The position numbers were made by a program, and so were the translations under genes. Below, in pieces: positions 15,747 to 62,878 of a stretch of DNA of 64,000 bases. The stretch is taken from NCBI GenBank assembly GCA_964247055.1, contig OZ176051.1, forward strand, positions 4,340,001-4,404,000, read 5' to 3'. Source of the stretch: Paragordius varius (taxonomy: Eukaryota; Animalia; Nematomorpha). Under the pieces are notes generated by a model. The model made no database searches, was not told the origin of the DNA, and saw only the letters and a program-made list of their open reading frames with translations. The number at the start of each line of letters is the position of its first letter. Within the stretch, counting starts at the first letter, position 1.

Positions 15747-16622
15747 ATGTCATTTAAATTTGCAATAGATCGCGGAGGGACATTCACAGATATATTCGCA
15801 GTTCTACCTAACAACACATTTAAAACTTATAAACTTTTATCAGAAAATCCGCTTCAATACAACGATGCACCAATTGAAGGCATCCGACGTATTATAAATG
15901 AAGTATTAATCTATTTTTACTAATCATTAATTTTATGTTCAATTAGTGATGGTTAAGTAAAATAGCTTTTAAACTAAAAATAAGAATAGTTATTCTCGGA
16001 ATCGAAAATGCTTTATTATTAACAATTATAAATCCGAAATAATAATTTTATAAACGAAAACTATGTAAACGGAAAATCAACTGAAAAAAGATACTGGAAA
16101 TTATACTGAAATTTAAATTTGAACTAAAAATATAAGTAATGTGTGAAATCGTGTCGTTTATCATTATTTCACGCATTATACAATTGTTAATAAAAAATCA
16201 AAATGGATTTATTATTACATAAAAATCAGAATAGTCCAGATCTTTAAAGAGAAATTCTTATAAAATGCTTCCCTTTATTTAATCTATCGATGCCAAATCT
16301 ACCCCCATTAATGGCAAATGAGTTATTAATTTCCATCTACTTAACTATTTTTGTAATACAATGTATTTTATATATATATCAATCACAGTATATAGAAAAG
16401 GCACCCGATAAAAACTTATATGGTGACAGTACAATAATTAATATTGAATGGATAAGGATTGGTACAACTTTGGCAACTAATGCATTGCTTGAACGCAAAG
16501 GGGCTAAAATGGCCCTTCTCATAACTGAAGGGTTTAAAGATATTATATATATTGGGAACCAAGCAAGACCTGATTTGTTTGATTTAGTAATCATTTTTAT
16601 GTTTATGAAATATTTTATTTTC

Positions 16623-16669
<47 letters not shown>

Positions 16670-19600: not shown

Positions 19601-22600
19601 TACCTATAAATGTATATTTGCACAATTGAACATTGATTATATTGCTTATTTAGTAGTATAACTTTTGTTAACTCTGATGTTACATATATAATTTTGTTTC
19701 AAACCTAAAAAAGGCAAGAGGATTTGAATCTTCAAAGCATATACTTTCTTGCTTTGGGTCTGCCAGTGGACAGCACGCATGCGCAATAGCTCGTCTTTTG
19801 GGTATCCGAAAAGTTTTTATCCACAAGTATATATTATTTCAATATTATGTAATTTGTAAAGATTTACGAATATTGGCTTAGTCGACATATAGGTTAGTTG
19901 TTATCAGGTGGGTCATTGATATCCTTGAAGTAAAGGCATTTTACACTATATAACTTTCCACAGGATAAATATTGGGTAAACACCTGATAAATACATATAA
20001 GGCGCCTTTAGGCATTAAAATTTTTTCGTAAATACGTCGAGAATAAGGTAAAAAATATAAATAAATTTTTAAATGTAAACAAAGGCATCGTCAGGAGTTT
20101 TGAAAAACTAAGTAAAACAAATTAGATATTTATTTTAAGTTTGTTTTTAAACAAGTCCTCGCGGTGCGAAAATATGAAATTATAAATTTATTTTTATTTT
20201 CTACCTATTTTGCGACGTGTTTACGGATCTTTTTTAACAAAGCTTCGTCGTTACCCAAATAAATTAATATTTTTTGTCGCTTTGTTTTTGATATAGGTAC
20301 TCTGGTATATTGTCAGCCTACGGAATGGCACTCGCTGATATATCTCATGAAGAACAAGAAAGTTTATTATTACCATTTGAAAGAAAAAACTATCCAATAA
20401 TTTGTTCAACGTTTGATGTGTTAGAAAAAGTGTGCAGAAAAAAATTGAATGTTCACTTAAATAATTCAGATATTAATGATAAAAATGATGAGTCATATAA
20501 CAATATAAATGTCTCTAATAAAGGGATTAAAGTTGTACGATTTTTACAAATGTCTTATGCGGGGACCCATTGTCCAATTATGTGTGAGGAGAAAACATCA
20601 CTCGATACAACTGTTAATTTAGATAAAAACGATTCTGTCTACTGGATAAATCAATTCAAGATGATATTTTTAGAGAAGTAATTTGTATTTTTTATGGGGT
20701 CTTGTACGTTTTTTAGAAAACTGAAATTAAATAGCCTCAGAGGGGGAATGCCATACACAAATAAATGCAAAAACAAATGTGCTAAACAGTTGGTTAGCAG
20801 TTGGGCAAAAAAAATTGTTTAAATCTTTTATGAATTTTTGGTAGATTTTTAAAAACCGCAAAATAGATCCGCCAACTTTTATATTTTGTCAAAGTGTTTT
20901 TGATATAATGCTTATATCGCAAACTATTTGATCACAATTTTTAATTTAATATACTATTAAACTTTTGAAAGGAATTAAATTTTAGCTAACATATCAATGT
21001 TACTTAGGTTTTACGGACTTGATGCTTAAATTAAAAATGAAGAAATGTTAAAAGCTATAATTGCATTTTCAAATTAATACTCTCTTTATCAATGATATAC
21101 CGATTCCCATTAAATTTAGCTATGAGTGATATGCACGCATTTTAATAAACATTGAAATTTGAAATAAATGAAAGTCTTAGCATAAGGCTTTAAATTATAG
21201 TATATGATTTACGACAATTTTAATATGCATGCAAAACTCCAAAAATGCTTGTTTTTTTTTTCAAAATTATGGGAGTTAATCTTTATTACCTATTATTTAT
21301 TATAAATACCTAATAAATTAATTATTTGGCTCTATGTTTAAAAAATTTATAGCCAATTTAGTTTTTTGCATTTACAGTATGCACATTAATGTTGCCCAAT
21401 TTACATTATTTTTGACCGATTGATAACATAGTAGTGGTAAAAAAATGTTGAATTTAATCAATATTTGCCTATCTTACAACATTAATTTGTTTATTAAATT
21501 ATAATCAAAAGTTATTTTTTTACACACGCTTGTGTATTATAAATTGGACAGCAATAATGTGAATAGGACAGCATAAATGTGTGTACTATATTTCCAGATT
21601 CTGTAAAACCATAATAAAAAATTAAATTATTATATTTCTCTCCATTTATAAATCATAATCAACTTTAGGTACAAAAGAGAATTCGGTTTTATTTTAGAGG
21701 ACAAACCAATAATCGTAGAAAATGTACGGGTTCGCGCAATTCTAAAATCCGATCATGATTATCTGGTGGAAAATGGAAAAATGTCCCTTAAAAGCCCCCC
21801 TGAATCTAAACCCATTAAAGTAATTGTTAAAATTTATATTATACCATTTACAGTTCAAATTCTCCCTTGAACAATTCAAATTCACCCTCGAAAAATTTGA
21901 TTTCACCCTCAATTAAATTATGTGTTTTTAAAGTTAAAAATTACCTATATTTTTTTATATGTTTAAAAAAATTTTTTTTAAAAAATTAAAATAATACTGG
22001 AAAATATTAAACTAAGTCATAAGAATATAAATCATATTAAATTAATGATGAGTTATATTTAAGGTGACCAGACGTCCCGCTTTTGGCGGGACAGTCCCGC
22101 TTTTTCACACTTTGTCCCGCCTCCCGCTAGTTTATAAGATGTCCCGCTTTTTCATGATTATATAAAAAAAAATTTTTTTTAATACAAATAATTTTTTTTA
22201 ATACAAATAAAATTTTTTTATTTTAAATTAAAATTTTTTATTTTTAAATTAAAAATATTTATTTTTTTCCAATTTATATCATATGATTATACACTTTCCT
22301 TCCTGCTACTACTGTCATTAATATCAAAAAGCCAAGTTATACTAGATCAAAAGACAAATTGATACCATAAATCGATACCTTACACGCTTTTTCCAGAAAA
22401 TTAAGGTAATATAACATTTATTATACTAATATTTAGTTTTAATAATTGCCAACATTATAAAAAATTTAAATTAATACTACAAATCGGTAGCTTAAAAGAC
22501 AAATTGATACTACAAATCGATACCTTACACGCTTTTTCCAGAAATTAAGGTAATATATTTATTATACTAATATTTAGTTTATATATATGAACACAAAAAG

Positions 22601-25600
22601 AGGCTGTAAATTCAATGATGAATTAATGAAAGATTTTCCTTTCATTAAAAAAACGAAGAATGAATCGTCTGTTAAATGTCTTATATGCGATGGGGAATTC
22701 ACCCTGGCACATGGCGGCAAACATGACATTACAAAGCATATTGATACACAGAAACATCAAAAATGTTTGATTATAACGGCATCATCTCACAAGATGAGCG
22801 ATTTTTTTCGAAAAACCGCTTTTGGAGAGGAAGAAAAGAATTTAGCACTTGCTGAGGGCCTGTTTTCCTTCCACGCCTTAAATCATTGCCATTCATTTCG
22901 TTCAATGGATTGTACCTCACAGGTTATTCGCACGTTATTCAATAAAAAATTTATATGTGCCCGTACAAAGGCTGAAGCCATTGTATGCAATGTTTTTTCG
23001 CCACATGCTTTTTCTGAAATACAAAAAGATTTGCTAAAAATTAATTTCTTTTCCCTATACTCTGATGCTTCAAATCACCATGAAACAAAATTATTTCCTA
23101 CTTTGATAAGATATTTTGATTCAGAAACCGGTATAAAAATTAAAATTTTAGATTTAATTTCCCTACCCGGTGAAAATTCTGAAATAATATTTACTTCAAT
23201 AATGCATATTCTAGAAAAAAATAATTTAAAAGACAAAATTATCGCATATTGCGCTGACAACACCAATACGAACTTTGGTGGAAAAGCAAGGAGAGGAGCA
23301 AAAAATATTTTTCATAAATTAACAGATAATCTTAATCAAAACATTATTGGCGTAGGGTGTGCAGCGCATATAATACACAACGCTATTCAAACAGCTGCAG
23401 ATTTGTTACCCTTAGATGTGGAAAATGTAGTTGTTAAAATATATTCCTATTTTTATATATACACGGTACGTGTTGAAACGCCGAAAGAATTCTGTGAAAA
23501 TGCAGAAGTTCAATATCAAAAAATGCTTGGATATAGTAAAACTCGTTGGTTAGCTTTTATGCCAGCTATCGAAAGAATTTTAAAGATGTATGATCCTTTA
23601 AAATCTTTTTTTTATCACAGGACAAATGTCCTACAACTTTAAAAAAATTTTTTGAAAGTGATTCTTCAAAAATATGGTTAGAATTCTTACATAATCAAGC
23701 TTCTCTCTTTCAAAATGTTATTAAATTTATTGAAGGTGACAAAATTTCGGCAGTCGAAGTAGACAATGAAGTTAGTAACCTGAAATTCCAATTCAAGAAC
23801 GGTTAGAAAATAATTTTATTCCATTAACCATCCGCAATACAATAAATAATTTAGAAAAACAAGGCTTAATAAATCGCCAAGATATCCTGTACCATATAAA
23901 AATGTTTTATACAAACTGTAAAGATTATTTGGAAGACTGGACGACGCAATTCAATGAAATTGATCATTTTCATTGGATAACATTAAAATCAGAATTTAAT
24001 TGGGCGATGTTCAAAAATCATTTGATTATATCTGCTCCCAAAAATTCTCAAAAATTGATCTTTCAGAAAATGATCTTTTTTCTGAAGTATCATTAGTTAA
24101 AAGATATATTAACACTTCGATTCAAATTGGGGTATCTAAATACCCCAGACTAAATTTAAATTAATATTTTTAAAAAAGTATTAAAGAAAACGGTCCCAAA
24201 TTAAATTTATGCTTCTATCCTGATAAAAATTATATAAATATGCTAAAATAGCTTGATAAAATTTTGTTTTGAAAAAAAAGTTCCATCTTAAACTACTTCG
24301 ACGCCATTTTTATTTTACAAAATTTTTAAAAAATATCGTCTTTATTCAATTTTAAGGGTAAAACTAAAGCCAATTTTTTATATAAATTACATTTTACATT
24401 GATAGAAATAGAAAAAGCGATTTATTTTGTATTATTTTTTCATTTTACAATTTGACATATGTCACGTTGACGAAATTTTTACCTTTCAGTTTTAGGTTTA
24501 AATAAGTATTTATCAAGTATATTTGAATTAAATTTTTTATATATTTCGGTTTATTAATGTTATATAAGTGCAAAATTTTGTCATGGTTTCGATTCCTTCC
24601 ATACTTCTTTAAGTATTTGATTTTAAACAGGCCTGGGGTATCCAACTACCCCAATTTGAATCGAAGGACTAAAATGAGTGTGTTGTATCCAAGTGTTAAT
24701 AATGAAAAACTTAAATTATGGACAAAAGAAAAATATACAGTAGAAAAGAAATGGTTGGAAATATTTCATCATTTTGAAGCCAACTATATTACAATAATAT
24801 TTTAAAAATTGTGGAATTCGCACTATCTTTACCTGGAACCAACGCTGCTACTGAGCGCGTTTTTTCCACAGTAAATCAGGTGTGGACATCGGAATCAAAT
24901 TTAAATGTTGAAACTTTGAAGGCCGTTTTATCTGTCAAATATAATTTGACAAATTCTTGTGAAGAGTTCTACAATATTTTAAAAAATGATGACAATCTGC
25001 TAAAACGCATTCACTCAAACCAAAAATATACCAAAGAATAAAATATTTTTTTTAAAGTTTTTGTGTTAAAAAACATAATTACCTAAAATATTGTATAAGT
25101 CTTCATAATTTGTCAAATTATATTTGAACACATAAAAGGTTTTTTATTCAACATTTAAATTTGATTCCGTGTCCATGCTTAATTTACTGTGGAAAAACGC
25201 GTTCAATAGCAGTGGTTCAGGTAAAGATAATGCAAATTCTACAATTAAAATATTATTGTATAGAACATAATTTTTTTAAAAATGATTATTTTAACCTATC
25301 CTACGTATTTTTTTCTGTTGTTTATAATATAAGCTTTCATTCAATATATTTATTTAATAATGAGACTTCATTAAAAAGTGTCATTGTGCACCGTTTGGTC
25401 TTCCAAATGATCGTTTCTGTTTAAAACATTTTTATATTCTGGCTATTCATTGAGCCTTGTTTTTCTGGATGTTTTATGATATTGCGATTAAGTAATGGTA
25501 TAAAATTATTTTTTAACCTTTTTTGACTTGGAATTTTGACCTTTGTCCTGTGATAAAAATTAGGATTCTAGGAGATCACATTTTTATAAATATTTCAATT

Positions 25601-28600
25601 GCTGGCAAAAGAGTTAACCAACAGTTCTGCAATATCCAAGCATTTTAACATCTATATTTTCCACATCCAGGGGTAACAAATCAGTAGCTGTTTGAATAGC
25701 GTTGTGTATCTGCCAATAATGTTTTGATTAAGATTATTCGCTAAATTGTTAAAAATATTTTTTGTGCCGCTTCTTGCATGACCCAGCGCACTTTGTGATG
25801 ATTTCGTCTTTATTATTTTTTTCTAGAATATTACAATCACTTCACCCTTTGTTCGTGCACATGTAAATTTATTGAATAAGGTACAAACAACCTGTGAGGT
25901 ACAAATTTTTTTATATTTATAATGTATTTGTGTTAAAAATAAATAAATATTACAATAAATTTTTTGTATAAAAATTGGTTGTGCCCCCCAATGACCCCCC
26001 CCCCCCCCCCTTCAGATTTGTCCCGCTTTTTCCTTCAAAAAATCTGGTCACCTTAGTTATATTACCCCGAAAAAACATAATTATTTTTTAATAATTGTTT
26101 AAGGGTGAATTTGAATTGTGAATGGTATATAACTGTTAATTTATTTTTTGTAAGCTGGCTGTGATTTTTGACTAAATAGTGCTCAAAAAATTGGAAAACG
26201 CAACTAAAAATACATATAAACTGTCATTTATAGAAAGTTATGTAATTCATTATTAATAAAACTCTATTTTATTGTTAATTCCTTAGGTTGTGAAAACATT
26301 TTTTAAACGTCACCCCAAAGACACTCACATTGCGGAAATGCTAACAAATGTGTATATTCAAGAAGAGGTACCGCCAAATACTCTTATCAAAGGACCGAGT
26401 ATCATTATATCACCAAATGGGTATTTATAAATTAATTACTAAAAAAACTCTAAAATAATACATGTATCATAAAATAATTAGAACTATAATCGTTGAACCG
26501 TACTGTACTTCCACTATAACGGTGCGTGGGAATGTTGTAATTGAAATTTGCGAACCCGAAGAAATTGAGCTCTGTATGACAAACGGACACTCTGCTTCCA
26601 TGGAAAACAAACGCATCGATAAAATTGATCCTATAAAATTATCTCTATACTGTCACAGGTTTTCTATATATTATATTTCGAACTAAACAGTATATATTTT
26701 TTAGATATAATAGACTTATATATCTGAGAATATAAGGCTTTTTAACCTAGCTAACTATATATTTAAAAGCTGCTTTGTAGGTTTTCTTTTGCAACAATGT
26801 TTTGTCTAAAGGTATATGAGTATAGCGGAACGTATGGGTAGAATGCTCAAACTTACAGCTTTGTCGACTAACATAAAAGAGCGATTAGATTTTTCGTGCG
26901 CTATTTTCTCTCCTGACGGGGGATTGGTAGCCAATGCTCCACATATTCCAGTTCATTTGGGTTCAATGCAACAGGCAGTCCAATACCAGGTAATTTCTAT
27001 TAATAAGCGGTGTCCTGAAGTTCTGAAAGGTCCTCGAATCGGTTTCGATTTGGAGATATTATTTTATATAAATAGATAAATTGGTAGTTTTGGGTCTCAA
27101 AAAAGCTCTCGTTCAGTTCTAATTCATTTGGGAAAAAGATATTTTTTAAATTTTATTATCAAGGACTTCTCAGACATTATTATTACATTTAAAATATTTT
27201 AAATAGAAACAATTTAATAATCTATAACCAGAACTTAAACTGTATATTAATAGAATGATTTAATAGTATAATGCATTGTTTTATCAAACTCAGATTGAAA
27301 CACTTGGCACTAATTTATTAGATGGGGATGTCATTTTATCCAATCACCCTTGTGCTGGCGGAAGCCACCTACCAGATTTAACGGTCATCAAACCGGTAAG
27401 TTTTGTAACTATTGGCTTTAAAATAATTACATATCATTTTAAGGAATAACATCGGTATTAGTATTATTTTGATGTTAAAAGCTAAAATAATAATTTTTGT
27501 AAGTATAATACAAATTGAAATTATACGGACAAAACGTAAAAATATAAAGACATATGTTTTTTTCTAAAAGACAAACATGCTATTTTAAACCTTAATATTT
27601 CCCTTATAAAAGTAGTTAATTACAATTGTAATTTTATATTTTGTAGTTTAAAAAAATCATTTATATTTAAAAAAATCCACATTAAAAAAGTATATAATTA
27701 CAATTGTAATTTTATATTTTGTAGTTTAAAAAAATCATTTATATTTAAAAAAAATCCACATTAAAAAAGTATGGGTATCGAAAAAAAATATTTTTATATT
27801 TTTACCTTTTGGTCGTGTAATTTTAATTTTTACTTTATACTTATCCTGTCTATTTGTTATCATTTAATAGTAATCAAATTAAGAAATATCAAATTTTCAG
27901 TGACGATCCTGTATTTTATGAATAAAATTATTTTTAATATTTCAATTTGATGGTCTCAACTAACTATTGATGCCGTAAACACAAAAAAACACAGTTAGTT
28001 TCAAAGTTTAAAATCATAAAATGTAATAACTGTTCAGTTTACCTTGGAATATTTCCATGTGCGGACTTATGTTTATGACTGTTTGGAGTGTTACAAAAGT
28101 CAAAATAAAATGTCATAAAATGTAAAAAAACAACTTTATATTATACAAAGGTTTTTCGAAACGGTAAACCACTGTTTTGGGTTGCAGCCCGAGGACATCA
28201 TGCTGATATTGGAGGATCTTTACCAGGTTCAATGCCAGCCAATTCGTCCAAACTTTCAGAAGAAGGCGCTACTTTCATGTCTTTCAAAATTGTGGAAAAT
28301 AACGTTTTTAAAGAGAAAGGTTTAAATTATTTAATTTATTTAACCACATGAAATCCATATAAACGCAGAAATTGAAACTGAGATTGGAGGCTTTAGCCTT
28401 TTCATAAATCTTTTTGCGACCAAAAAAACGTTCATTAAAAAACGGTTTCGTCTGGAAAATAATTTTTTTGAATAATTTTTTAAATAATTGATTACGAGAT
28501 AAACCTTATACATTTATTATTTCTATTCATTTTCTCGATTTGTCAGACTATATAATATAGTTAAAGAGCTTATAATTTTGTGACATTTTATCTTGCATCA

Positions 28601-31145: not shown

Positions 31146-34100
31146 CGATTTTACTAATAAATGCATTATCATTTTCTTACACTATCTCTATGATCTAACA
31201 TAACATAATACAAGGAAAAAAATATAAAATTGCAATTTCATTTACTAAATATTTACAACATTTTGCTATATATTTAACAAAGCAGTTTTTTGATTTGTTT
31301 TATGTTTAGATATCCTGTTATATTGGGAAAGTTTGGAATATGCCAAAACACAGGTGGTAAAGGTCAATATGTAGGTGGAAACGGTGCAATTCGTGAAATG
31401 CTTTTTAGGAAACCTCTTAATTTATCCATTTTAACCGAAAGGAGAGTTTTGCATCCATACGGGCTATTTGGTATTTGCTTTAATTATATATCATCATTTC
31501 TGATTTCGGTATTAAATAGTGTATGTCATATTTTTGTGACTTACGATTGGCAACATCTTTAGAAGCAATATTTATTTTTCTTCAGTTTATTGTTTCTTAG
31601 GTTAGCGGGCCTAAAATATCTTTAAATCTGTTTTTATTGCATTTTTAATATTTTGTATAAAATTTCTTTTCTTTTATATTACCTAACCAGTTAGATCTTA
31701 TTGCTCTATATCTAAGAGTTTGTTGTGAAAAATGGAAATTATTTTTTTTATTTGGCTGAGGAACACATAAAGGATGGATTTTATTTTCAGTGTTCTTTTA
31801 TATCCGTTTTATTCATGGCTAGTTTGGGCACATGTGCCAAAGTTAGCGGTATCGCTTTAGCTTAAACTTAATTTTTAATTAAGAATATGTTTTGCGGCAA
31901 TGCTTGGACTTAAATGTTAATATAAAAAATATGAAAATTTATTTAAGAACGTGTCATAGAATAAATAAAATTTGCGTACGGTTTCGGACACTATATATGT
32001 CCGTCAGCGTTAAAAAAAACATAAATGGATATGGATAAAATGGTTGTTCTTTATATACAATTTTTAATAATGTTTATTGTTGTTTTTTTCCAAAAATAAT
32101 AAGTGTCATTGAGAGTGGTTTAAACCATGTCGAACGAACAATTTTTTAAATTTACAAACATAAGTTACTAAAAATTATGAATAAAAAGACAAACAATGGG
32201 ATCAATCATCAAGAATGACTTTCCATATATACCATTTTCATGCAAAAACATCATTTTTTCAACCAAGCTCAACATTTTTTCATGCAAACGCAACATTTTT
32301 TTCAAGCAAACGCAACATTTTTTCAAGCAAAGACAACAATTTTTCAAGCAAACGCAACATTTTTTCAAGCAAACGCAACATTTTTTCAAGCAAACGCAAC
32401 ATTTTTTCAACCAACGACAACATTTTTCAAGCAAAAACAACATTTTTTTTTTATATAAAAAACCATTTTTTTTATTTTAAGACATATTAAATTTAAAGTT
32501 AATGTAAATTAATTTTAGCGTAGAATTATGATTATTGTTTTATCATTAATATTTGATGGTATGATTGATTTTTAAACATTTTAATTTAGCCCAAAAATTC
32601 CATTATTTATTTATATTAATTATTTTATTCTTTTACAACTTAAATTTCACCTAATCAATCTATACTGCGCTTCAAGATTGTTCTTTTAACTTAGTCCTAG
32701 AACACTTCAAGTTGATCCTTCAATATTTTAATTTTGATTCTAACGTTTATTAATGAGGCAATAAAATATTCATTATTCAATCATTTAAACCTATTTTTTT
32801 TATTTAACCTAAACCTTTAAGTGAATACATTTATTTCATAAGAACCGTATATCCTTATTATTTTCTATAAATTAATATTAATAAATATCTACGTTTTGTG
32901 GGTTATTGATGGTAATATTTAGTTTAAAACAATAATAAATTTATAATATTGATAAATTAAAGAAAATTTCAAAAGTTGTTTTGCTATGAAAATATTAATT
33001 TTGATTCAAAAACCAATAAATAGAGATATTAGTTTAAATTTAAATAGATAATTACGCACAAAAATAACGGTTGTATGGTGCAAAAAATGTAAGGAATTTT
33101 AAGCGAAGGATAACTTTAAATTTTTAAAGAGAGTCTTAAAGCGCAAATTGTATTGATTGATAAAAAAATATTTATAAATAAATAATGCAATTTATGGGCT
33201 AAATTAAAATGTTTGAAAATCAATTATACCATCTATTGATGATAAAACAATAAAAATCATAATTCTAGTCTAAAATTAATTTACATAAACTTTAAATTTA
33301 TGTCTTAAAATAAAAAAAATTGGTTTTTTATTTTAAAAAAATTGTTGTTTTTGCTTGAAAAAATGTTGTCATTGGTTGAAAAAATGTTGCGTTTGGATGA
33401 AAAAATATTGTCTTTTGTTGAAAAAATGTTGCGTTTGCTTGAAAAATTATTGTCTTTGCTTGAAAAAATGTTGCGTTTGCTCGAAAAAATGTTGTCTTTG
33501 CTTGAAAAAATGTTGCGTTTGCTCGAAAAAATGTTGTCTTTGCTTGAAAATGTTGAGTTTGGTTGAAAAAATGTTGCATTTGGTTGAAAAAATGATGTTT
33601 TTGCATGAAAAATGGTATATCATTCATCTTTTATCCTTCCTCTTGGTTAAAGTTGTTTCTTTTGAGAATCTCTAATGCACGTGTAAGCCTTTGATTATTT
33701 TTGAATCCAACAATTTTCCGCAAAACAACTTTCAAAATCCCGTTTTTTTATGTTATACTTGTCTTTATTCAGTCGTGTTTTAACTTTCCTTGCGATTTGG
33801 CCGATATAAACCTTACCAGGTTTAAGCCACTCTCAATGACAAATTGTTTTAACTTATTATTTTTAGAAAAAAATAACAATTAACATTTTAAAAAATTGTA
33901 TACAAATAAGAACCATTTTATCCATACCCATTTATATTTTTTTAACGCTGAGGACGGACATACGTTATAGTGTACGAAACCGTACGCATTTATTTATTCT
34001 ATGACACGTTTTTAGATAAATTTCCATATATTTTATACTATTTACGTGCCGAAAATGAATTATATTCTACAATTTAAAAATTGATTTTTAACATATTCTT

Positions 34101-37100
34101 GCAAATACTGGTGATATGAGCCATTTTTTACTATCCACACCCTTTTTAAAAACCGTTTTATCAATTAATAATTTTTTTAAAACTAGGTAGGTATCTGCTA
34201 ACAATGTAACTAGAAGTAATAAAGTTTTATAACCCCTTCCTTAATCTGCCACATGGTATATTAAAAAATGATTGATCGTTGTAAGCAGGTTCTACGTTTT
34301 TATTAGTTATTACTTTACAAAACTAACCAAGGACTTAAGCTGTTTGTACATTTTATATAAATTATCGGAAGCGACTATTCAATTTCAAATATATTCAAAA
34401 TAATTATATTTGCTTATTAATTTTTCCTCCTTCATAAATAAATTATAGGCGGAGAATTTGGTTCCCGAGGTGTAAACTTATTGAAAAAATGTGACGGAAA
34501 AATGGTATACTTAGGATCAAAATGCTCAACCAAAGTGGATGCTGGGGTACTATTACTAATTTTAGACAAAAGATTATTTTTATCACAATTAAATTTTAAA
34601 ATGCAAATTTTAAAACATATGTGTTAAATCATTAATGAAACTTATTTATTATTATTTTTTTCATTTCATTTTAATTTGGATGCAACGATAAATGACCGCA
34701 TTAAAACAGTACAAGATAAATAAGGACAAAACGGTGAGAAAAATCCTGAAGGGATATAAATATTAAAACCTGAAATGCCACAAATAACTGATGATTCGGT
34801 ATTTGGGCTATTTTTTAAAATAATTAAAACACTCACACGAAGTTTTCATTTTCAAATAACGTGATTCATATGGAATAAAAAATTTTGAAAACCCCAATTT
34901 TATCAATGATTTTATTGACTAACCTTAAATAATTATGCTTTTCTGAGCTAAAACTCTTAAATGATATTTGCCTATAACATATTTATCATTTTGTCGGATC
35001 AATACTTTAATTTAAATTATTTTAATTTTTTATGTTACTTTTCAAAATATTTGTATAAAATTTATAGATTTAAAATATCATAATCAGTTAATTGGCTTTC
35101 GTAAATACTAAACTTGTTTTTGATAAAAGTATACCATTTACAGTTCAAATTCACCCTTGAACAATTCAAATTCACCTTTGAACAATTCAAATTCACCCTA
35201 AAAATAAATTATGTGTTTTCGAACTAATATAATTCATTATTAATATGAAATATATGTTTATGGTATAGTTTATTTTTTTTTTCAGTATTATTTTAATTCA
35301 AAACAAAATTTTTATTTTTGAAAAATATATAAAATATAAATAATTTTTAATCTTTAAAAACATATTTTATTTGAGGGTGAATTTGAATTGTTCGAGGGTG
35401 AATTTGAATTGTTCAAGGGTGAAATTGAATTGTAAATGGTATAAAATGGTGGATTTCCTATTTAAAAATTGTTTAAATATGACATTTGAGCCATTGCTAG
35501 AGTTGCCGGCTGTCATCAAGCCTGGCGTGTGGTTCATTCACATGGCTCTTAGTAAAAAAAGAAAAAAATTAAGCAAACTAACTGTATCAATATACGTTTA
35601 ATCTTATTCTTTAAAAACGGAATCTACAAATAAATATATACCATTTACAGTTCAAATTCACCCTTAACCAATTCAAATTCACCCTCGAACAATTCAAATT
35701 CACCCTTGAACAATTCAAATTCACCCTCGAACAATTCAAATTCACCCTTGAACAATTCAAATTCACCCTTGAACAATTCAAATTCACCCTTGAACAATTC
35801 AAATTCACCCTTGAACAAAATGCTTATTTTTTGATTCATATTAAGGGAAAAAACTTTGGGAATTATTTTGCCATTTCTTAAAATTTTTTTAAATGGTTTA
35901 ATAATAAAATTCAAAGCGGAAATACCTATATTTAATAGAAAATTTCATAATTTTTCCGTTTTTTGATGTTCCAAGATTATAATACAAACATTAAAACAAT
36001 TATTAGCCATAAATCATTTATTAATATGTTTATAATAAAGTAAATAATAGCGTTAAAATTATAATTATTGGTGCACATAAACACGTCCCTCCGCAGCATT
36101 TGCAAGATTGTGGTTTACATAATCACAAAATCCTTTAACATCCGTTGCTGTTATTTGTAGGCATCCATAGTTAACTAAATCTTTCAATGATGCATTACTT
36201 TCATTACTAATTGCAGAGCAGACATTAGATTTTATTTTGGAGAATGCGTTTTCTATTGGATTGAGCATGTAGCTATATGGAGCCAAAAATGAAATTTTGT
36301 AGTGGTATCCATCAGCTATATTGTTTAAAACTTCCCTTTTGTGAATCTTTGCATTATCCAAAATAAAATGAATTCCTTCTAAATTCAAAGAGGTGAGAAA
36401 TTCACATAAATCTTTGAAAAAATTAGAAAATATGTCTCCATTTACATTTCTCTCACATTCTATTCTGTGAAATACAATTCCCTGTGACCCCATAGCTGCA
36501 ATAAGGGTTATGTTTCTTCCTTTTATGTTAGGAAGTTTAACAATGGCCCTTGTACCGCGTTTAGATCTTCCAAAATTTCGCCTAAGGTGGTTGTGGAAAC
36601 CACATTCATCAATGAAAACCACCTTTGTTGTATCAAAATTAAACGTTTCGAGAAACCAAATGGCATACTCTTTTCTTTTTCTAATTGTATCCGAATCATT
36701 TATTTTGTTAATCTCTGTATGAGTTTTTTTCATTGTTATCGCTAGTTTTTGGATTATATTTTGAATGGTACTGCAAGATATGCGAAAATCGCATTCATGT
36801 TCTAAAAATAATTTTAGCGATTTTAGAGTGATTAAGGGGTTTTCGCTAATTTTTTCTTCGACTATGTTGACAATGCGATCCGTAATCTTTTCATATCTCT
36901 TTCCACCTTGCGATTTACACTTAATATTTTTTTTGTACTTCATAACAAATGATTTGGCGGTATTATAATTAATATCCAACGATTCAGCCACCATTTTTAT
37001 CGAATCCCCATCCATAATTGTTGATTTTATTAGGCGCTTCTTATCATGTTCACTAAGTTTCGTATAATTCTTTTTGACATCTATCTTAGATTAAAAATAT

Positions 37101-38937
37101 ACCAATTAATATAATTTCACTGTCTTGATTTGTAGTGTTAGCCATTTATTTTACAAAAAATTATTGTCTGCTTGTTGGGTAGTTAAAAATATTCTTATAG
37201 TCAAAGCAGACGGTATATTTTATGCGACGTGTAATTTTTCCTTTATAACATATATTTAATTAATTTAAAATTTTTAACTACCCAACAAGCAGACAATAAT
37301 TTTTTGTAAAATAAATGGCTAACACTACAAATCAAGACAGTGAAATTATATTAATTGGTATATTTTTAATCTAAGATAGATGTCAAAAAGAATTATACGA
37401 AACTTAGTGAACATGATAAGAAGCGCCTAATAAAATCAACAATTATGGATGGGGATTCGATAAAAATGGTGGCTGAATCGTTGGATATTAATTATAATAC
37501 CGCCAAATCATTTGTTATGAAGTACAAAAAAAATATTAAGTGTAAATCGCAAGGTGGAAAGAGATATGAAAAGATTACGGATCGCATTGTCAACATAGTC
37601 GAAGAAAAAATTAGCGAAAACCCCTTAATCACTCTAAAATCGCTAAAATTATTTTTAGAACATGAATGCGATTTTCGCATATCTTGCAGTACCATTCAAA
37701 ATATAATCCAAAAACTAGCGATAACAATGAAAAAAACTCATACAGAGATTAACAAAATAAATGATTCGGATACAATTAGAAAAAGAAAAGAGTATGCCAT
37801 TTGGTTTCTCGAAACGTTTAATTTTGATACAACAAAGGTGGTTTTCATTGATGAATGTGGTTTCCACAACCACCTTAGGCGAAATTTTGGAAGATCTAAA
37901 CGCGGTACAAGGGCCATTGTTAAACTTCCTAACATAAAAGGAAGAAACATAACCCTTATTGCAGCTATGGGGTCACAGGGAATTGTATTTCACAGAATAG
38001 AATGTGAGAGAAATGTAAATGGAGACATATTTTCTAATTTTTTCAAAGATTTATGTGAATTTCTCACCTCTTTGAATTTAGAAGGAATTCATTTTATTTT
38101 GGATAATGCAAAGATTCACAAAAGGGAAGTTTTAAACAATATAGCTGATGGATACCACTACAAAATTTCATTTTTGGCTCCATATAGCTACATGCTCAAT
38201 CCAATAGAAAACGCATTCTCCAAAATAAAATCTAATGTCTGCTCTGCAATTAGTAATGAAAGTAATGCATCATTGAAAGATTTAGTTAACTATGGATGCC
38301 TACAAATAACAGCAACGGATGTTAAAGGATTTTGTGATTATGTAAACCACAATCTTGCAAATGCTGCGGAGGGACGTGTTTATGTGCACCAATAATTATA
38401 ATTTTAACGCTATTATTTACTTTATTATAAACATATTAATAAATGATTTATGGCTAATAATTGTTTTAATGTTTGTATTATAATCTTGGAACATCAAAAA
38501 ACGGAAAAATTATGAAATTTTCTATTAAATATAGGTATTTCCGCTTTGAATTTTATTATTAAACCATTTAAAAAAATTTTAAGAAATGGCAAAATAATTC
38601 CCAAAGTTTTTTCCCTTTTAATTTGATAATATGAATCAAAAAATAAGCATTTTGTTCAAGGGTGAATTTGAATTGTTCAAGGGTGAATTTGAATTGTTCA
38701 AGGGTGAATTTGAATTGTTCAAGGGTGAATTTGAATTGTTCGAGGGTGAATTTGAATTGTTCAAGGGTGAATTTGAATTGTTCGAGGGTGAATTTGAATT
38801 GGTTAAGGGTGAATTTGAACTGTAAATGGTATATTAATACATAGCAAAATTGACGTTACACTAACGAAAATCTATAATTTTAGGAAGTTCTTTCCATCCA
38901 AACCCCAGGAGGTGGCGGTTATGGTCCTTACAAATAA
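15747..38937 (+). CDS. OPLAH: 5-oxoprolinase (ATP-hydrolysing; hydantoinase A+B domains), 26 exons, about 1336 aa
   Basis: Phase-consistent GT-AG exons: 15747-15902, 16389-16586, 16922-17053, 17387-17493, 17575-17883, 17989-18122, 18219-18307, 19007-19124, 19186-19328, 19424-19549, 19714-19826, 20297-20677, 21669-21819, 26287-26420, 26482-26658, 26812-26989, 27294-27395, 28151-28319, 28787-28896, 29156-29380, 29590-29724, 29993-30142, 30335-30495, 31310-31470, 34449-34546, 38884-38937 (4011 nt). Motifs: [76 protein letters not shown]. Confidence 0.95.
16626..16666. repeat. (AT)n microsatellite
   Basis: Pure AT run. Similar runs at about 11061-11082, 31109-31142, 58211-58240 and 60393-60428. 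Confidence 0.9.
22587..25041 (+). pseudogene. hAT transposase pseudogene (BED-type zinc finger, DDE core, hATC dimerisation motif)
   Basis: [27 protein letters not shown]; LYSDAS; [11 protein letters not shown]; [11 protein letters not shown]; SKTRWL; [14 protein letters not shown]. Frameshift near 23610, further breaks, and a TTAA MITE inserted at 24113. Confidence 0.9.
24113..24695 (-). mobile_element. piggyBac-like TTAA MITE inserted in the hAT transposase
   Basis: TTAA at 24109-12 and 24696-99. Removal rejoins [10 protein letters not shown]|NEKLKLW of the transposase. Confidence 0.92.
27617..27772. repeat. 78-bp direct tandem duplication in an OPLAH intron
   Basis: TAATTACAATTGTAATTTTATATTTTGTAG...AAAAAAGTAT at 27617 and again at 27695. 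Confidence 0.85.
30780..30999. mobile_element. About 220-bp hairpin MITE in an OPLAH intron
   Basis: TA|CAGTCATGTATCCT ... AGGATACATGACAG|TA. Long perfect inner arms (AAATATTTGGTAAAGAATGGAAAAAACAAGAGCTCTATGGTA and its reverse complement). Confidence 0.72.
31974..32011 (-). ncRNA. Hammerhead-like motif in the Penelope 3' arm (core partly deleted)
   Basis: Reverse complement reads aacg-CTGAC-GGACA-tatatag-TGTCC-GAAA-cc-GTA-cgc. Perfect 5-bp stem II, and in sense orientation to the GIY-YIG ORF. Confidence 0.45.
32230..33617. mobile_element. Non-autonomous Tc1-type element, second subfamily (ends TACCATTTT(T)CATGC; different 21-bp array)
   Basis: Long imperfect TIRs (about 32230-32690 and 33120-33617) contain arrays of TTTTTTCAAGCAAACGCAACA. 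TA duplication at 32228-29 and 33618-19. Removing the element restores the Penelope reading ...KMNDI|WKVILDD*. Confidence 0.85.
33944..33988 (+). ncRNA. Hammerhead-ribozyme-like motif (type I, degenerate) in the Penelope inverted arm
   Basis: aacg-CTGAGGA-cggacatacgttatagtgtac-GAAA-cc-GTA-cgc: core CUGANGA / GAAA / GUA with a stem II. Stem III is very short and the pairing imperfect. Confidence 0.5.
35132..35441. mobile_element. 310-bp MITE of the TACCATTT Tc1 family
   Basis: Ends TACCATTTACA(G/A)TTC with 2-3 of the same 21-bp units at each end. TA duplication at 35130-31 and 35442-43. Confidence 0.9.
35641..35817. repeat. Subterminal 21-bp tandem array (8 units) of the palindromic Tc1 element, left arm
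   Basis: Unit TTCAAATTCACCCTTGAACAA repeated at 21-bp period from 35651. Confidence 0.95.
36065..37145 (-). CDS. Mirror-image identical Tc1/IS630-like DD34E transposase (exon 37145-37103, intron 37102-37081, exon 37080-36065)
   Basis: The supplied translation of 36065-37015 is identical to that of 37445-38395. Coordinates are symmetric (pairs sum to 74460). Confidence 0.92.
37315..38395 (+). CDS. Tc1/IS630-like DD34E transposase (about 352 aa with exon 37315-37357, 22-nt intron, exon 37380-38395)
   Basis: VFIDECGF ... FILDNAKIH ... [17 protein letters not shown], with 34 residues between the second D and the E. N-terminal HTH-like segment [13 protein letters not shown]...[19 protein letters not shown] 37445-38395 is intact. 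The upstream in-frame HTH part is reachable only by splicing GTATATTTTTAATCTAAGATAG. Confidence 0.92.
38653..38829. repeat. Subterminal 21-bp tandem array (8 units), right arm
   Basis: Reverse complement of the left array, with the same unit variants in mirrored order. Confidence 0.95.
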
Positions 38938-39640
38938 TTCTACATTAAACCAATTTTTAATTACTACTAATAATATATCCATTTTTATATATATTTTTAA
39001 CCATTTATAACTCCACTTTATGGTAAGCAATGCAATTCACATAGTTCACAATTAATGTAACAAATCATAATATTTGCAATAAATATGACCTGGGTATAAT
39101 AAAACAATTACTTGTAAGTTGATTTTACATATCTTAGCTTTTATGGTATGTTGTTATTTAAATATTTTTTAATTTCAGTGAGATTCGAGTTAGCATTTTT
39201 TATGAAATCATAATAATTTGAGAATAGAAAATATAAACAGCATTTTTCTGCGACAATTGTAAAAAAATGTGACAGGATAAAAATAAACTTGTTATATAAT
39301 GTAGAAAACAATCATTTTGATTTAATTGAGTGGGTCCTAAGGCGAAAATTTGAGAACCAAATCATTTTGATCACTATTTTAGAAACAGATTAGGAACAAA
39401 GTAAATATTGGCAAATTTTGCTTTTTAGAGTTTATGGTTTCCAAATCTTTTAAGAATTCATACTTTTTGGGGTATTTATATACCCCAGGGCCATTTGAAA
39501 TTTAAAAAAATATTTTTCGGGTCAAATTTGGAATTAGCTTTCTTTGACCCTTTAGTTCCATGATACAAATTTATGTTAAAAAAAAATCAAAGTGTAAAAA
39601 TATCCTTATGTCAAATTTTCGCCGCCATTTCCCACTTTAA

Positions 39641-40190
39641 CACTGGATACAACACATTCATTTCAGTCCTTCGATGCAATATTAGGATCGTTGGATACCT
39701 CAGGCTAGTTTAAATAAAATATTTAAAAAATATGGAATAAATTGAAACCAACTTATATAACATTAATAAACCGAAATATAAAGAAAATTCATTGAAAAAC
39801 TTGATATTACTTATAAGGTAAAACCCAAAGGTAAATCTAGCCAACATAACATGTGTGCATAAGCTAAATATGAAAATAATGCAAAATATACCACTTTTTT
39901 GTTTATATTAATGTTAAATATGCTTTTAATAAAAAGTAAACTTAATTGTAGCCTTAGAATCTAATTAACACGATATTTTGCATAAATTTTGTAAAATAAA
40001 AATGATGTTGAAGTAGTGTGATACGGAACTTTTTTTTTAAAGCTTAATTTCCATATATACTTTGGCTTATTTACATAATTTTTATTAGGAGAGAAGCATA
40101 GGTTAAACTGGAACCGTATCCTTCAGAGTTTTTTTAAAAATTTCAACTTAAATATTGTATGGGGTATTTAGTTACCCCAATTTAAATCGA
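39641..40190 (+). mobile_element. Diverged piggyBac-like TTAA MITE between the OPLAH and RBMS 3' ends
   Basis: TTAA|CACTGGATACAACAC start. Colinear to GGGGTATTTAGTTACCCCAATTTAAATCGA; right end decayed. Confidence 0.7.
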
Positions 40191-41053
40191 TCATGAATGG
40201 AACGGGCAAATAAATGTATGTTATGGTTAAACAATATCAATGATTAGAAATCTTTCAAATTACTATTTACGAGCAAATTTTTGATCTTTCTTCCAAAAAC
40301 ACTGTAAAAATTCTAGTTTCTATTCTTTATCTAACACAGGAGAAGAAGGTTTGATAATTAAATTTTAACCAAAACAATAGTTTGTATACTACTTTAAGCT
40401 CTCCAAAATGTCATAATCACAAAAAATGAAAATGTCTTTAAGTGGTAAATTGCGCTTCGTTAAGTAATAACCTGACATAAAATATTTATTTTAAATAAAA
40501 AATTTATTTTTCATGATTGGTTTGTTCTATATTAAAAACATATGTTTGATATATAAAATATGATGCATATAGGCCAATCACAAATCATTGTTTTCAGTTT
40601 TTTTACTGCAAAGACACAAAATTAATTTATATCCAAAAAGAAATATGTATTGATATAAAAATTTATGGGTTAACCTATAAAAACCATTAAATGATTTCTT
40701 TTTAAAAAATAAAATTCAGCCGATTATATATATAAAACCGGGTGTTCATGATTGCAAATGCTTACTTTTTGCCTTATTTTGATTATGGATAATCTAAATA
40801 GATAACAAAAAATAATGTACTTATTGCCCCCCTATTGATCTATATCCTTTTCAGCAGAGATAATATTAAATTAAAAACAATAATTAGGTATGAAAATCTG
40901 GGATTTAAGTGTAATTGCGTTTTTGCGTTACCATAGCCGGATTACTCAATGATATTAACCAATGGTATATTATTGCGAAATCAAACCCAAAATACACATA
41001 AATTAATTTTCTCAATTTCCATTCGTATTTGGCTGCGTTTTGTATTAATAATT

Positions 41054-44000: not shown

Positions 44001-47000
44001 TTATTATGGGAGTAATTAGAGGCCGAGGTTGGACTTGAAGAATTATCAGCAAATTTGCACATGATAGGTTTGGAAGAACCTAAACAGGAATATTTAATAA
44101 ATTCACCTTTGAACAATTAAAATTAACCCTCAAATAAATTATGTGTTTTTCTTAAGATTAAAAATTACCTATACGTTTTTATGTATTTTTAAAAAATAAA
44201 ATTTTGTTTTAAATTAAAATAATACTGAAAAAATATAAAAACTATGCCAAAAAGATATATTTCTTATTAATAATGAGTTATAATAGTTCAAAAAACACAC
44301 AATTTATTTTTAGGTAAATTCGAATTGTTCAAGGGTGAATTTGAATTGTAAATGGTATATTAGTAAAAATATTCTATTAAAAAATAACTTACATCGAAAT
44401 TTGATAGAAACCGCAAAACATAAATACTAATCAAAGTTTTTAAATAAAACCATTTAACAGGCAGTTTTTAATAAAGTCATCAAATGGATCCTTAATTTTT
44501 ATTTAGTTTATAAGATATTGTGTTTAACCAAAGCTTACGGAGCCCTTAAATTTAAAAGCCCGTAACCCTGATCGATAATGCTATATAGAAAAAATTAAGG
44601 AGACAAAAATGGCAGACTATATAAAAATTGAGAGTCATTTTCTGGTTATTTGTTATAGACTGTGATTTACATATTTTTGGTCGTTAATGTTGTATTTAAC
44701 CCAAAAGATATTTTGAAAAAAATTAATCAAAAGGCAAAGAGGTTTAAAATAATGTAAAATTTAAAAATGTTAAAAACCTTCCAATACTAAACCGTGAAGA
44801 CTGGCTATCACATTTTCGCAAGCAGAACGAGATTCTAACCTAAAAAATAAATAATAAAATTATTTGGTGAATTAAGGATAATTTTCTTATAAATTTTGTC
44901 AACAATTAATTTTGATAAAATAATGTATAGAAACTTATAGTATTTTAATGAAAAAGATAATTTTAACAAAGTATATTAACCATTTAAATAAAAGTATATA
45001 TTTTTAATGTGAAATTTGGAGAATTACTGTATATACAAGTCGTTTTTTAACATAATTATTCATTAGAGCAAATATACAGAGTAATAAAAATTGAACACTT
45101 TTATAATGTAAGAGATTAATTTTTTATCAATCATCTAAATATCTTATATGTTACAGTTGTAAATTAAAATCAATGAGAAACATCCTCATTTCATAGTATA
45201 CTATTCACATTCTAATCTACCCTTGAACAATTCAAATCACCCTATTTAATTCGAACTAATATAACTCATTATTAATATGAAATAAATCTTTATGGTATAT
45301 ATTATTTTTTCAACAAAATATTAGTTTTTAAAATATATTGAAAAATAGGTTATTTTTAATTTAAGGGTGAATTCGAATTGTTTAAGGGTGAATTTGAATT
45401 GTAAATGGTATAAATAACCGTAATCATATATGTTATAAATAAAAAAATTAAATAAATAAGCCTATCTTTATAAAAAAATATTAATCTTTTAACTTTTTTA
45501 TGTTTACTCCATATAATTCTAAATATACTACACTATAGTTAGCCATTTAAAAACCACCTTAAAGCCACAATTTAAAATATAAACTTTTTTCAAAAATGTT
45601 AATAAAATAAAAGTTTTATCACCTAGCAAAACCTACACCACGGCTTTTTAAATTGCCATTTTTAGAGCCAATATTTGGTGGATGTTCTTTAAGTATACGG
45701 ATAGAAAGAACTGATCCATGCGGGCTAATTAAGCTTTCTAATTCGGGTTCTGTCATAGAGAGAGGCAAATTTGCAATATACAAATTGGTAGAATCCAAAG
45801 ACTGTTGCTATAAAATAATAGATATATACATGTATAAAATTGCATCTAAATACTCATCTTATATTTTGGAAATATTTTGTTAACACATATATGATTATAA
45901 AATGATTGTTATTTAATTCCTTTATTATTCAAAAAACAACTTGAATTTATAAAAAGGTATATGAAACTAAAATTGGAATCAAAACACTTTTATCGTTTTT
46001 TAAATAAACCCGTTTATTAGTCAAAAAATAACATTAAAACGATTTTTTGTCGAATAATTATATATATGATATTAACAATTAGCGTATGAAATCAATATTG
46101 TTTTAAAATTACAAAAAAATCTTTTTTCTAATCTATAAAAAATAGGACAAAATTTTCGCATTTTATTTTTATAGTTATCATTCAAACTGAATATTTTAGG
46201 ATTTTAAATTTGAAAAAAAAAAAAAAAATAAAATTTAACCATTGATAGAAAACGATGGTAACGCCAAAAAATTATACGAAAATTGTTCGAAAAAAATAGA
46301 AAGTATTTTATGATTTATGAATATTTTTTACTATATTTAGTATAAATAAAAAAATAATAAAAAAAACCTTAGCCATTTGTACTTGCATACCCAACGATTT
46401 CAAATCAGTCAAAGCAGTTTGTGCGGATTCTACAGTTTCGAAATCCACGAAACCAAAACCTATATTATAGGTATATTTTTACAAAATTTAACAATTTTAT
46501 CTTGTGAATTTTAATCAAATATAAACTATTTTTGTATTTGCAATGACTAACCCAAAATTTAGCACAAAATAATTTGATATTACATGTATTAAAATTTATT
46601 TTTAAATTTAAAAAAACGCAGGACTAGCGGTAAGAATATTGATGTTAACTTCTCTTTATAAAATAGAGCGGACAGCATATAGTTTTTGAAAAATTTATTA
46701 TATCGGGCTTTTATTTGAAAATAAACATATTTTGATTCCTGGCGTTTATAGAAAGTATAGTGATAAAATACAGACAAATTTTTTTGTTACCACAATAATT
46801 AATTAAAATGTTTTGAATAACTCCGTATAGTGTAAACTTTATAAAATTATTTAGGGCTTCGAATTCTATCACATATAATTGTACAAAATTTTGATTATAA
46901 AACAGTTAGGATATACGAAATTAATAGTGGATAAAAAATTTATCTATACCACAGTACAGTAAGATATAAATAACTAAAACAAGATTATATTTATTGATTA

Positions 47001-62678: not shown

Positions 62679-62878
62679 NNNNNNNNNNNNNNNNNNNNNN
62701 NNNNNNNNNNNNNNNNNNNNNNNNNNNNNNNNNNNNNNNNNNNNNNNNNNNNNNNNNNNNNNNNNNNNNNNNNNNNNNNNNNNNNNNNNNNNNNNNNNNN
62801 NNNNNNNNNNNNNNNNNNNNNNNNNNNNNNNNNNNNNNNNNNNNNNNNNNNNNNNNNNNNNNNNNNNNNNNNNNNNNN
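62679..62878. other. Assembly gap (200 N)
   Basis: Run of N. Confidence 1.

What the first reader, a model, noticed from the sequence alone, without database searches (positions are those of the whole stretch)
35639..38831. Twin-transposase palindromic Tc1 element: the whole transposase gene lies inside a 1.55-kb TIR
Seen: two reverse-complementary arms of about 1.55 kb, a 79-bp spacer, two identical intact DD34E ORFs pointing outward, identical TACCATTTACAGTTC ends and a TA duplication. Established: Tc1/mariner elements normally have one ORF between short (tens to about 250 bp) TIRs. Inference: this is a mobile foldback dimer that moved as one unit. It probably arose by template switching that replaced one end with an inverted copy of the gene-bearing end. 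Near-identical arms imply a very recent origin or ongoing arm-to-arm gene conversion. OPLAH exons continue in the correct order and strand on both sides, and the arms differ by a 10-nt indel; both argue against a foldback-read artefact. I do not recall a described Tc1 family with this layout, but I cannot search to confirm novelty.
Basis: partly seen in the sequence, partly recalled or inferred. Interest (0 to 1): 0.9.

Follow-up and report, generated by a model that had tools for sequence, protein, structure and literature searches.

The report
Mirror-image transposon with twin transposase genes
A 3.2-kb jumping gene in an intron of the animal's OPLAH gene consists of two mirror-image halves, each with a complete transposase gene; it is real, occurs in several copies and is missing from this site in another individual, but it is an extreme form of a known process (inverted-repeat extension).

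Summary
The element spans 35639-38831 and is flanked by TA on both sides. It has two inverted arms of 1552 and 1562 nt around a 79-nt spacer. The arms differ only by one 10-nt indel.

Each arm carries a complete gene for a 352-aa DD34E (Pfam DDE_3) transposase with a 22-nt intron. Each arm ends in a 208-nt array of 21-bp repeats.

It is not an assembly artefact. A second individual's contigs cross the whole spacer and both junctions. The spacer is there at about 2.4 times single-haplotype depth and the arms at about 6 times. That individual probably has an empty site here, which I infer rather than see directly. So the dimer very probably exists at other loci and moves as a unit.

One substitution (37727) is carried by both arms of this copy but by no other copy, which argues for arm-to-arm gene conversion.

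Two relatives (a microsporidian genome and a metagenome contig) share the terminal motif but have the ordinary layout: 1.5-1.7 kb, 130-nt inverted ends, one gene.

The closest precedent is inverted-repeat extension in Galileo (P superfamily). The scan's earlier, mostly unchecked notes report the same kind of element on other DNA of this genome.

Verdict: a real new variant of a known kind, of moderate to high interest.

The parts
35639..38831 (.). Whole palindromic element (3193 bp), TACCATTTACAG...CTGTAAATGGTA
35637..35638 (.). Left copy of the TA target-site duplication
   Evidence: MITEs of the same family also have TA|TACCATTT...AAATGGTA|TA.
38832..38833 (.). Right copy of the TA target-site duplication
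35639..35843 (+). Left outer end: terminal motif followed by about 8 direct 21-bp repeats (unit ACAATTCAAATTCACCCTTGA). Probable transposase binding sites (inferred).
   Evidence: families D1/D2, pair I2. Depth 10^5-10^6 shows the repeat is shared with very abundant MITEs.
38627..38831 (-). Right outer end, 100% complementary to the left one
   Evidence: I2
38617..38627 (.). 10 nt present only in the right arm (opposite 35843/35844). This is the only internal difference between the arms.
36065..37145 (-). Left transposase gene: exon 1 37145-37103, 22-nt intron 37102-37081, exon 2 37080-36065 (352 aa)
   Evidence: Mirror image of the right gene
37191..37269 (.). 79-nt asymmetric spacer at the centre, unlike the arms and the interiors of the MITEs
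   Evidence: Spanned by an independent individual's contig (record 21).
37315..38395 (+). Right transposase gene: exon 1 37315-37357, 22-nt intron 37358-37379, exon 2 37380-38395 (352 aa, DD34E, DDE_3)
34547..38883 (+). Last intron of the host OPLAH gene (4337 nt), which holds the element and a MITE
   Evidence: Exons 34449-34546 and 38884-38937. Hydantoinase_B at 31290-31559 and Hydant_A_N at 16290-16664.
35132..35441 (.). Non-autonomous MITE of the same family: same ends, three 21-bp repeats per end, TA flanks
   Evidence: (I9). Depth up to 2.5 million.

Best explanation
This is a real cut-and-paste transposon of the IS630/Tc1 (DD34E) kind whose inverted ends have grown to take in the whole transposase gene. 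An ordinary ancestor had one gene between ends of roughly 130-400 bp built from 21-bp repeats. That ancestor lost its 5' end and gained an inverted copy of everything from 45 nt upstream of the start codon to the 3' end. The most likely route is a template switch between the two inverted ends during repair of a break or of the gap left by excision; this step is inferred. The product keeps two perfect outer ends, so the transposase, which can come from either gene copy, would cut it out and insert it at TA as one 3.2-kb unit. That it exists at more than one locus, and is polymorphic here, is supported by read data. The two arms are kept identical by gene conversion between them; this rests on a substitution that both arms share and other copies lack. 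The family's transposase is also the likely driver of thousands of MITEs with the same ends (inferred). Because the element lies in an OPLAH intron, the host pre-mRNA would contain a hairpin with a stem of about 1.55 kb. That hairpin could feed small-RNA silencing of the family, but this was not tested.
For: Anatomy. Each arm holds a complete 352-aa gene that aligns end to end with homologues. There are no inner ends: the terminal motif and the 21-bp unit occur only at the outer 208 nt. The two relatives whose DNA I read have the ordinary layout with the same terminal TATACCATTT motif. Enteropsectra breve L001 is about 1.66 kb with one ORF; its outermost inverted pair is 37 nt at 95% and its longer repeat-built pairs reach 118 nt. 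ENA contig L002 is about 1.5 kb with 133-nt ends and one ORF. An independent individual has the spacer junction at about 2.4 times haplotype depth and the arms at about 6 times. In the likely source sample the arms stand at about 8-9 times haplotype depth. The left flank-to-end contig has depth 210, that of a single haplotype. The private substitution at 37727 has the depth of two arms. The central 379 nt fold at -235.8 kcal/mol, z = -35.9. The mechanism has a precedent in Galileo.
Against: The data were Logan contigs, not reads, so depths are rough and rare variants are dropped. The empty site in the second individual is inferred from two contig pieces of equal depth that end at the element's borders, not from a listed joint. 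I could not read any other copy with its flanks, so movement as a unit rests on depth ratios and on unchecked scan notes. The ratio of arms to spacer in X4 is about 2.5, not 2, so some copies may lack the twin layout. There is no RNA evidence that either gene is expressed: the RNA runs listed hold none of the sampled words. Only 45 nt plus the spacer lie upstream of each start codon, so the promoter may have been lost.
Confidence: 0.72

Rival explanations
1. One-off rearrangement in place. An ordinary element inserted here at TA, and one end was later replaced by an inverted copy at this locus. The dimer itself has never moved.
For: TA flanks prove only the first insertion, not movement of the dimer. 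I could not read a second twin copy with different flanks.
Against: The spacer junction is present at about 2.4 haplotype equivalents in an individual whose haplotype appears empty at this site. Arm depth is about 8-9 equivalents in the source sample, against 2 expected for one heterozygous copy. Unchecked scan notes report palindromic DD34E elements of 3199 and 3245 nt on other pieces.
Confidence: 0.1
2. Assembly artefact: a foldback or chimeric long read turned a single-gene element into a palindrome.
For: Perfect palindromes are a known artefact of long-read libraries (general knowledge). The likely source run cannot count as independent support.
Against: A different individual, whose flanks differ from the window by 4-5%, has one contig across the spacer and both junctions (record 21). 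The spacer is 79 nt of AT-rich sequence in keeping with the local base composition. The arms differ by a 10-nt indel. The host exons are in order on both sides.
Confidence: 0.03
3. Each twin is made anew. A fixed short inverted repeat near the 5' end makes ordinary copies fold back repeatedly at the same point, so shared spacers and identical arms reflect repeated formation rather than inheritance plus gene conversion.
For: Scan notes report palindromic forms in several transposon families of this genome, and the same window holds a hAT-like gene with a decayed inverted partial copy. This suggests a host-wide tendency.
Against: Microhomology at the junction is only 2-3 nt, too little to direct the same junction repeatedly. 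The spacer has no match in the arms.
Confidence: 0.07
4. Its main effect is as a silencer. The element is chiefly a hairpin-RNA source, like Mu killer of maize, that shuts down its own family rather than being an active autonomous element.
For: It lies inside an OPLAH intron on the transcribed strand, so the pre-mRNA would carry a stem of about 1.55 kb. The native 5' end, which usually holds the promoter, is missing.
Against: Both genes are intact, with splice sites kept, and the element is multi-copy and polymorphic, which speaks for recent activity. No small-RNA or RNA data were available.
Confidence: 0.08

Closest known systems
Ordinary IS630/Tc1-like DD34E elements with repeat-built ends (the relatives in Enteropsectra breve L001 and ENA contig L002; in design also the IR/DR ends of Sleeping Beauty-type Tc1 elements)
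   Same: DDE_3 transposase of about 350 aa with an N-terminal paired-like region. TA target. Terminal TATACCATTT motif. Ends built from 21-bp direct repeats. Identity 38-43%.
   Different: The relatives are 1.5-1.7 kb with one gene between inverted ends of roughly 130 nt. Here the ends are 1.55 kb, each containing the gene, and there is no separate 5' end.
Galileo (P superfamily, Drosophila): extension of the inverted ends by recruitment of internal sequence
   Same: Internal sequence, including part of the transposase ORF (69 bp to over 500 bp), becomes part of both inverted ends. Repair or template switching between the two ends is the proposed cause (PMC4168063, PMC3573991).
   Different: It is another superfamily with a 7-bp duplication. 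Only part of the ORF is recruited, and in defective copies. The authors called the trait unique to Galileo. Here the whole intact gene is doubled in a Tc1-type element.
Foldback (FB) elements of Drosophila
   Same: Long inverted ends with internal tandem repeats, and a nearly palindromic overall form.
   Different: FB arms are non-coding repeat arrays and FB elements make a 9-bp duplication (general knowledge). Here the arms are mostly unique coding sequence and the target is TA.
Mu killer (maize): an inverted duplication of part of MuDR
   Same: An inverted duplicate of a transposase gene that can give a long hairpin RNA when transcribed from outside.
   Different: Mu killer is a partial, immobile derivative that silences MuDR (general knowledge). 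Here both copies are complete, the outer ends are intact and the element is multi-copy. Silencing was not tested.
Bacterial composite transposons (Tn5, Tn10)
   Same: Two inverted copies of a transposase-bearing unit move together using the outermost ends.
   Different: Each IS in Tn5/Tn10 keeps its own inner end and there is cargo between them (general knowledge). Here there are no inner ends and only a 79-nt spacer.

Membership tests
IS630/Tc1/mariner superfamily (DD34E Tc1-like) | DDE catalytic triad with 34 residues between the second D and the E | tested here: met
   D136, D220 and E255 are invariant in alignment A1. DDE_3 scores 9e-23.
IS630/Tc1/mariner superfamily (DD34E Tc1-like) | TA target-site duplication | tested here: met
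   TA lies at 35637-38 and 38832-33. The MITE at 35132-35441 has the same TA flanks. TA is common in DNA of 27% GC, so this is consistent rather than proof.
IS630/Tc1/mariner superfamily (DD34E Tc1-like) | N-terminal paired-like helix-turn-helix DNA-binding domain | tested here: inconclusive
   There are only weak Pfam hits, below the curated cut-offs: HTH_Tnp_Tc3_2 at 0.0051 and HTH_32 at 0.0085. Homologues carry PAX/HTH_28 hits, and the spliced N-terminus aligns with them.
IS630/Tc1/mariner superfamily (DD34E Tc1-like) | One transposase gene between short inverted ends (usual layout, not strictly defining) | tested here: not met
   There are two genes, each inside a 1.55-kb inverted arm.
Foldback (FB) elements | Arms made of non-coding tandem repeats; 9-bp duplication | tested here: not met
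   Only the outer 208 nt are repeats and the rest is a gene. The flanks are TA.
Galileo-type extension of the inverted ends | Coding sequence present in inverted orientation in both ends | tested here: met
   The whole gene is in both arms. This is a shared process, not shared ancestry: Galileo encodes a P-type transposase.
Mu killer-like silencer | Hairpin transcript and small RNAs that silence the family | not testable with these tools
   Only the hairpin potential is shown. The listed RNA runs hold none of the sampled words.
Composite transposon (Tn5/Tn10 type) | Each unit has both an outer and an inner end | tested here: not met
   No terminal motif or 21-bp unit lies inside 35844-38626.

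The most novel reading that the evidence does not exclude
In this AT-rich animal with tiny introns, the mirror-image twin-gene form is a heritable, mobile architecture and not a dead-end accident. It would be a main autonomous source for a MITE family with thousands of copies. Its two gene copies would repair each other by gene conversion, giving a self-backed-up transposon. The same palindrome-making process would act on several transposon superfamilies (Tc1 and hAT) across the genome, pointing to a host-specific bias in break repair.
Probability: 0.3. Interest if true: 0.75.

Novelty: new variant of a known kind. Interest (0 to 1): 0.6.

Why it matters
Tc1/mariner elements are the textbook simple transposon: one gene between short inverted ends. 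A multi-copy, polymorphic member whose ends each contain the complete gene shows that extension of the inverted ends can go to completion without ending mobility. It also offers a natural case for three questions. How does transposition cope with a perfect 1.5-kb palindrome? Does gene conversion between the arms protect a transposase from decay? Does a host gene's read-through transcript of such an element trigger small-RNA silencing? For genome annotators it is a warning that such elements are real and should not be discarded as foldback artefacts.

Tried and rejected
- An exact-protein look-up of the 316-aa ORF found nothing on record. The nearest proteins in the 5.8-billion set are only 43% identical, so no other copy could be fetched with its flanks.
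- A look-up of the Strongyloides relative P0001 found no contig.
- A search of the scan's notes by sequence was blank.
- The spacer has no significant match to the arms, to the three MITEs or to the two solo ends in the window: scores 19-32 against a shuffled maximum of 32. Its origin stays open.
- The 351-aa ORF at 22587-23642, which lies between two ends of this family, is not a relative of this transposase. The protein atlas puts it with hAT-like DUF4371/ZBED5 proteins.
- A full-text search for 'palindromic transposon', 'twin transposase', 'two transposase copies' and similar phrases found no relevant paper. A mariner paper on aphids only mentions palindromic motifs within the ends.
- The organism's name is coded in the run tables, and I ran no further search on it.
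- Read-level spanning of the palindrome, and the presence of the spacer in the other species labels (X3, X6), could not be settled.

Full report
**1. The observation**

The repeat finder gives two pairs of inverted arms. The first is 35843-37193 / 37267-38617 (1351 nt). The second is 35636-35843 / 38627-38834 (208 nt, 100%).

A script shows that these are one arm pair interrupted by a single 10-nt indel. The extra bases are in the right arm, at about 38617-38627.

The ends TACCATTTACAGTTCAAATTCACCC lie at 35639 (+) and 38831 (-) with no mismatch. TA lies just outside each end. The outer 208 nt of each arm consist of the terminal motif and about eight 21-bp direct repeats. The only run of N in the window is at 62679-62878.

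**2. The genes**

Two identical 316-aa ORFs run outward from the centre.
- They match Pfam DDE_3 at 9e-23.
- In an alignment with seven homologues, D136, D220 and E255 are invariant, which gives a DD34E spacing.
- The homologues are 345-365 aa long and have about 40 more N-terminal residues (Y.KIS..KR..LI...).
- That stretch is present upstream in the same frame and is reached from an ATG at 37315 by removing a 22-nt GT..AG intron (37358-37379).
- The spliced product is 352 aa and aligns from end to end.

This agrees with a separate first-reader note on this window (s1-305441). Each arm therefore holds a complete gene. Only 45 nt of arm plus the spacer lie upstream of each start codon.

**3. 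The host context**

Hydant_A_N lies at 16290-16664 and Hydantoinase_B at 31290-31559 on the + strand. The exon 34449-34546 reads ..[16 protein letters not shown]. The exon 38884-38937 reads [17 protein letters not shown].

The element therefore sits in the last OPLAH intron (34547-38883), together with a 310-bp MITE of the same family at 35132-35441. An OPLAH pre-mRNA would contain the whole palindrome. The central 379 nt alone fold at -235.8 kcal/mol, z = -35.9.

**4. Is it real, and is it a family?**

Two run searches found DNA runs of the same species label from two samples, S1 (runs X1, X2) and S3 (runs X4, X5), and of other labels. All are held as Logan contigs. I laid X1, X4, X3 and X6 on 34400-40300.

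Source sample (X1):
- Haplotype-specific flank contigs have depth about 170-210. At 39180 the two alleles have depths 208 and 170.
- A contig of depth 210 runs from the left flank into the end of the element (35417-35658).
- Contigs inside the arms have depth 1518-1767, or about 8-9 arm equivalents.

Second individual (X4):
- It is a different individual: its flank contigs differ from the window by 4-5%, at depth about 60.
- One 133-nt contig (record 21, depth 145, one mismatch) covers 37164-37296, that is the whole spacer and both junctions.
- Its arm contigs have depth 360-382.
- Its flank pieces end at about 35634 and begin exactly at 38832. They carry no end sequence of the element and have the same depth (57.8). 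I read this as one contig across an empty site. This is an inference, because the joint was not among the 15 rows shown.

Together these results rule out an assembly artefact. They make it likely that the dimer, with this spacer, sits at other loci and is polymorphic here.

First-reader notes, not followed up, report palindromic DD34E elements of 3199 and 3245 nt on other pieces of this genome (s1-316064, s1-257533). Other notes report single-gene elements of about 2.47 kb with 21-bp arrays (s1-261378, s1-299089). These fit my reading, but I could not read those loci.

**5. Gene conversion between the arms**

At 37727 the window has A, and by the arms' identity it has T at the mirror position 36733. 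In X1 the A form has depth 382 of 1749, which equals two arm equivalents and hence one heterozygous twin copy. All other copies carry C. In X4 every copy carries C, although X4 has the same spacer.

A substitution private to this copy yet present in both arms is what gene conversion between arms predicts. The variant at 38245/36215 behaves in the same way, but the window's form is not seen in X1's contigs, which drop rare variants.

S3's arm contigs differ from this copy at 4 of 386 positions. The two arms of this copy differ at 0 of about 1550 positions, apart from the indel.

**6. The ordinary layout of the clade**

The best protein matches are only 38-43% identical. They come from Strongyloides papillosus, several microsporidia and Hermetia. 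I read the DNA around two of them.
- The Enteropsectra breve copy (L001) is about 1.66 kb (about 3768-5431). Its ends are built from 21-bp units, with an outermost inverted pair of 37 nt at 95% and longer repeat-register pairs up to 118 nt. It has one 357-aa ORF.
- An ENA contig (L002) has an element of about 1.5 kb with 133-nt ends and one ORF.

Both begin with TATACCATTT, as here. The twin layout is therefore derived.

**7. How it probably arose and works**

No terminal motif or 21-bp unit lies inside the element, so there are no inner ends. The junction shows only 2-3 nt of possible microhomology, and the spacer matches nothing nearby.

The simplest origin is the one proposed for Galileo. 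While a break in one end, or the gap left by excision, is being repaired, the new strand switches to the other inverted end. It then copies on into the interior, so that internal sequence comes to lie in both ends (PMC3573991, PMC4168063). Template switching in gap repair at DNA transposons is also documented in PMC8277862.

Here the copied tract ran through the whole gene. The outer ends stay perfect, so the transposase can treat the dimer as an ordinary substrate.

What is shown and what is inferred:
- Shown: the anatomy, the intact genes, several copies, and the junction in another individual.
- Inferred: the origin by template switch, present-day activity, expression from the short central region, mobilisation of the MITEs, and any hairpin-RNA silencing.

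**8. Comparison with what is known**

By its catalytic domain, target and ends it is a member of the IS630/Tc1 DD34E group. It departs from the group's usual one-gene layout.

In process it resembles Galileo's extension of the inverted ends. In Galileo up to a little over 500 bp of ORF is recruited, and the authors call the trait unique to Galileo.

It is not a Foldback element, because its arms are coding and its target is TA. It is not a Tn5/Tn10-type composite, because it has no inner ends. It resembles Mu killer only in its potential to give a hairpin RNA.

Full-text searches for 'palindromic transposon', 'twin transposase' and related phrases found no description of such a Tc1-type element. 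That is weak evidence for novelty, because the library is incomplete.

Two followed-up reports of this scan (s1-334294, s1-298867) and one first-reader note (s1-324180) describe 8.3-8.4-kb palindromic Tc1-type elements elsewhere in this genome. The kind has therefore been met before on other DNA of this genome.

**9. Verdict**

This is a new variant of a known kind, of moderate to high interest.

The main open points are these:
- a direct view of other copies with their flanks;
- read-level spanning of the palindrome;
- expression of the two genes;
- whether the twin form or a single-gene relative drives the very abundant MITEs.

Noticed in passing
window 21842-26127: A 4.3-kb stretch is bounded by ends of this same Tc1 family (21842 +, 26127 -). 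It holds a 351-aa ORF (22587-23642) with no Pfam hit, which the protein atlas places with hAT-like DUF4371/ZBED5 proteins. A decayed, shortened inverted copy of part of that ORF region lies at about 25387-25904 (75-91% complementary in pieces). This is a second, older palindromic transposase duplication in the same window.
   Followed up: partly
window 35132-35441, about 44099-44360, about 45197-45412: These are MITEs with the same terminal motif and 21-bp repeats as the twin element. Summed contig depth over the first reaches 10^5-10^6, against a few hundred for single-copy flanks, which suggests thousands of copies.
   Followed up: partly
window 39644-40205: Another very high-copy repeat (depth 10^5) has ends reading ..TTAACACT and an internal ATTGGGGTAGTTGGATACCCCAGGCC hairpin-like core. 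A copy also lies at 24106-24675. It is probably a different MITE family.
   Followed up: no
runs X3, X6, X7, X8, X15 (other species labels): Runs labelled as other organisms, with contig totals of about 166-815 Mb, hold pieces of the arms at 99-100% identity. Some also hold flank pieces (97.5-100% identity) at depths of only about 2-25. This suggests either very close relatives or traces of this organism's DNA in other samples, for example a parasite, symbiont or prey.
   Followed up: no
window 37410-37704 and 36785-36997 (reads only): Contigs about 91-92% identical to the transposase gene, at depth of about one haplotype equivalent in both individuals, indicate an older diverged paralogue. 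In X1 the contig's first 91 letters do not match the twin element upstream of 37410 (records 4, 20, 23).
   Followed up: no
window 32181-32487 and 33309-33672: Long tandem arrays of short units give false ORFs in several frames in OPLAH introns.
   Followed up: no
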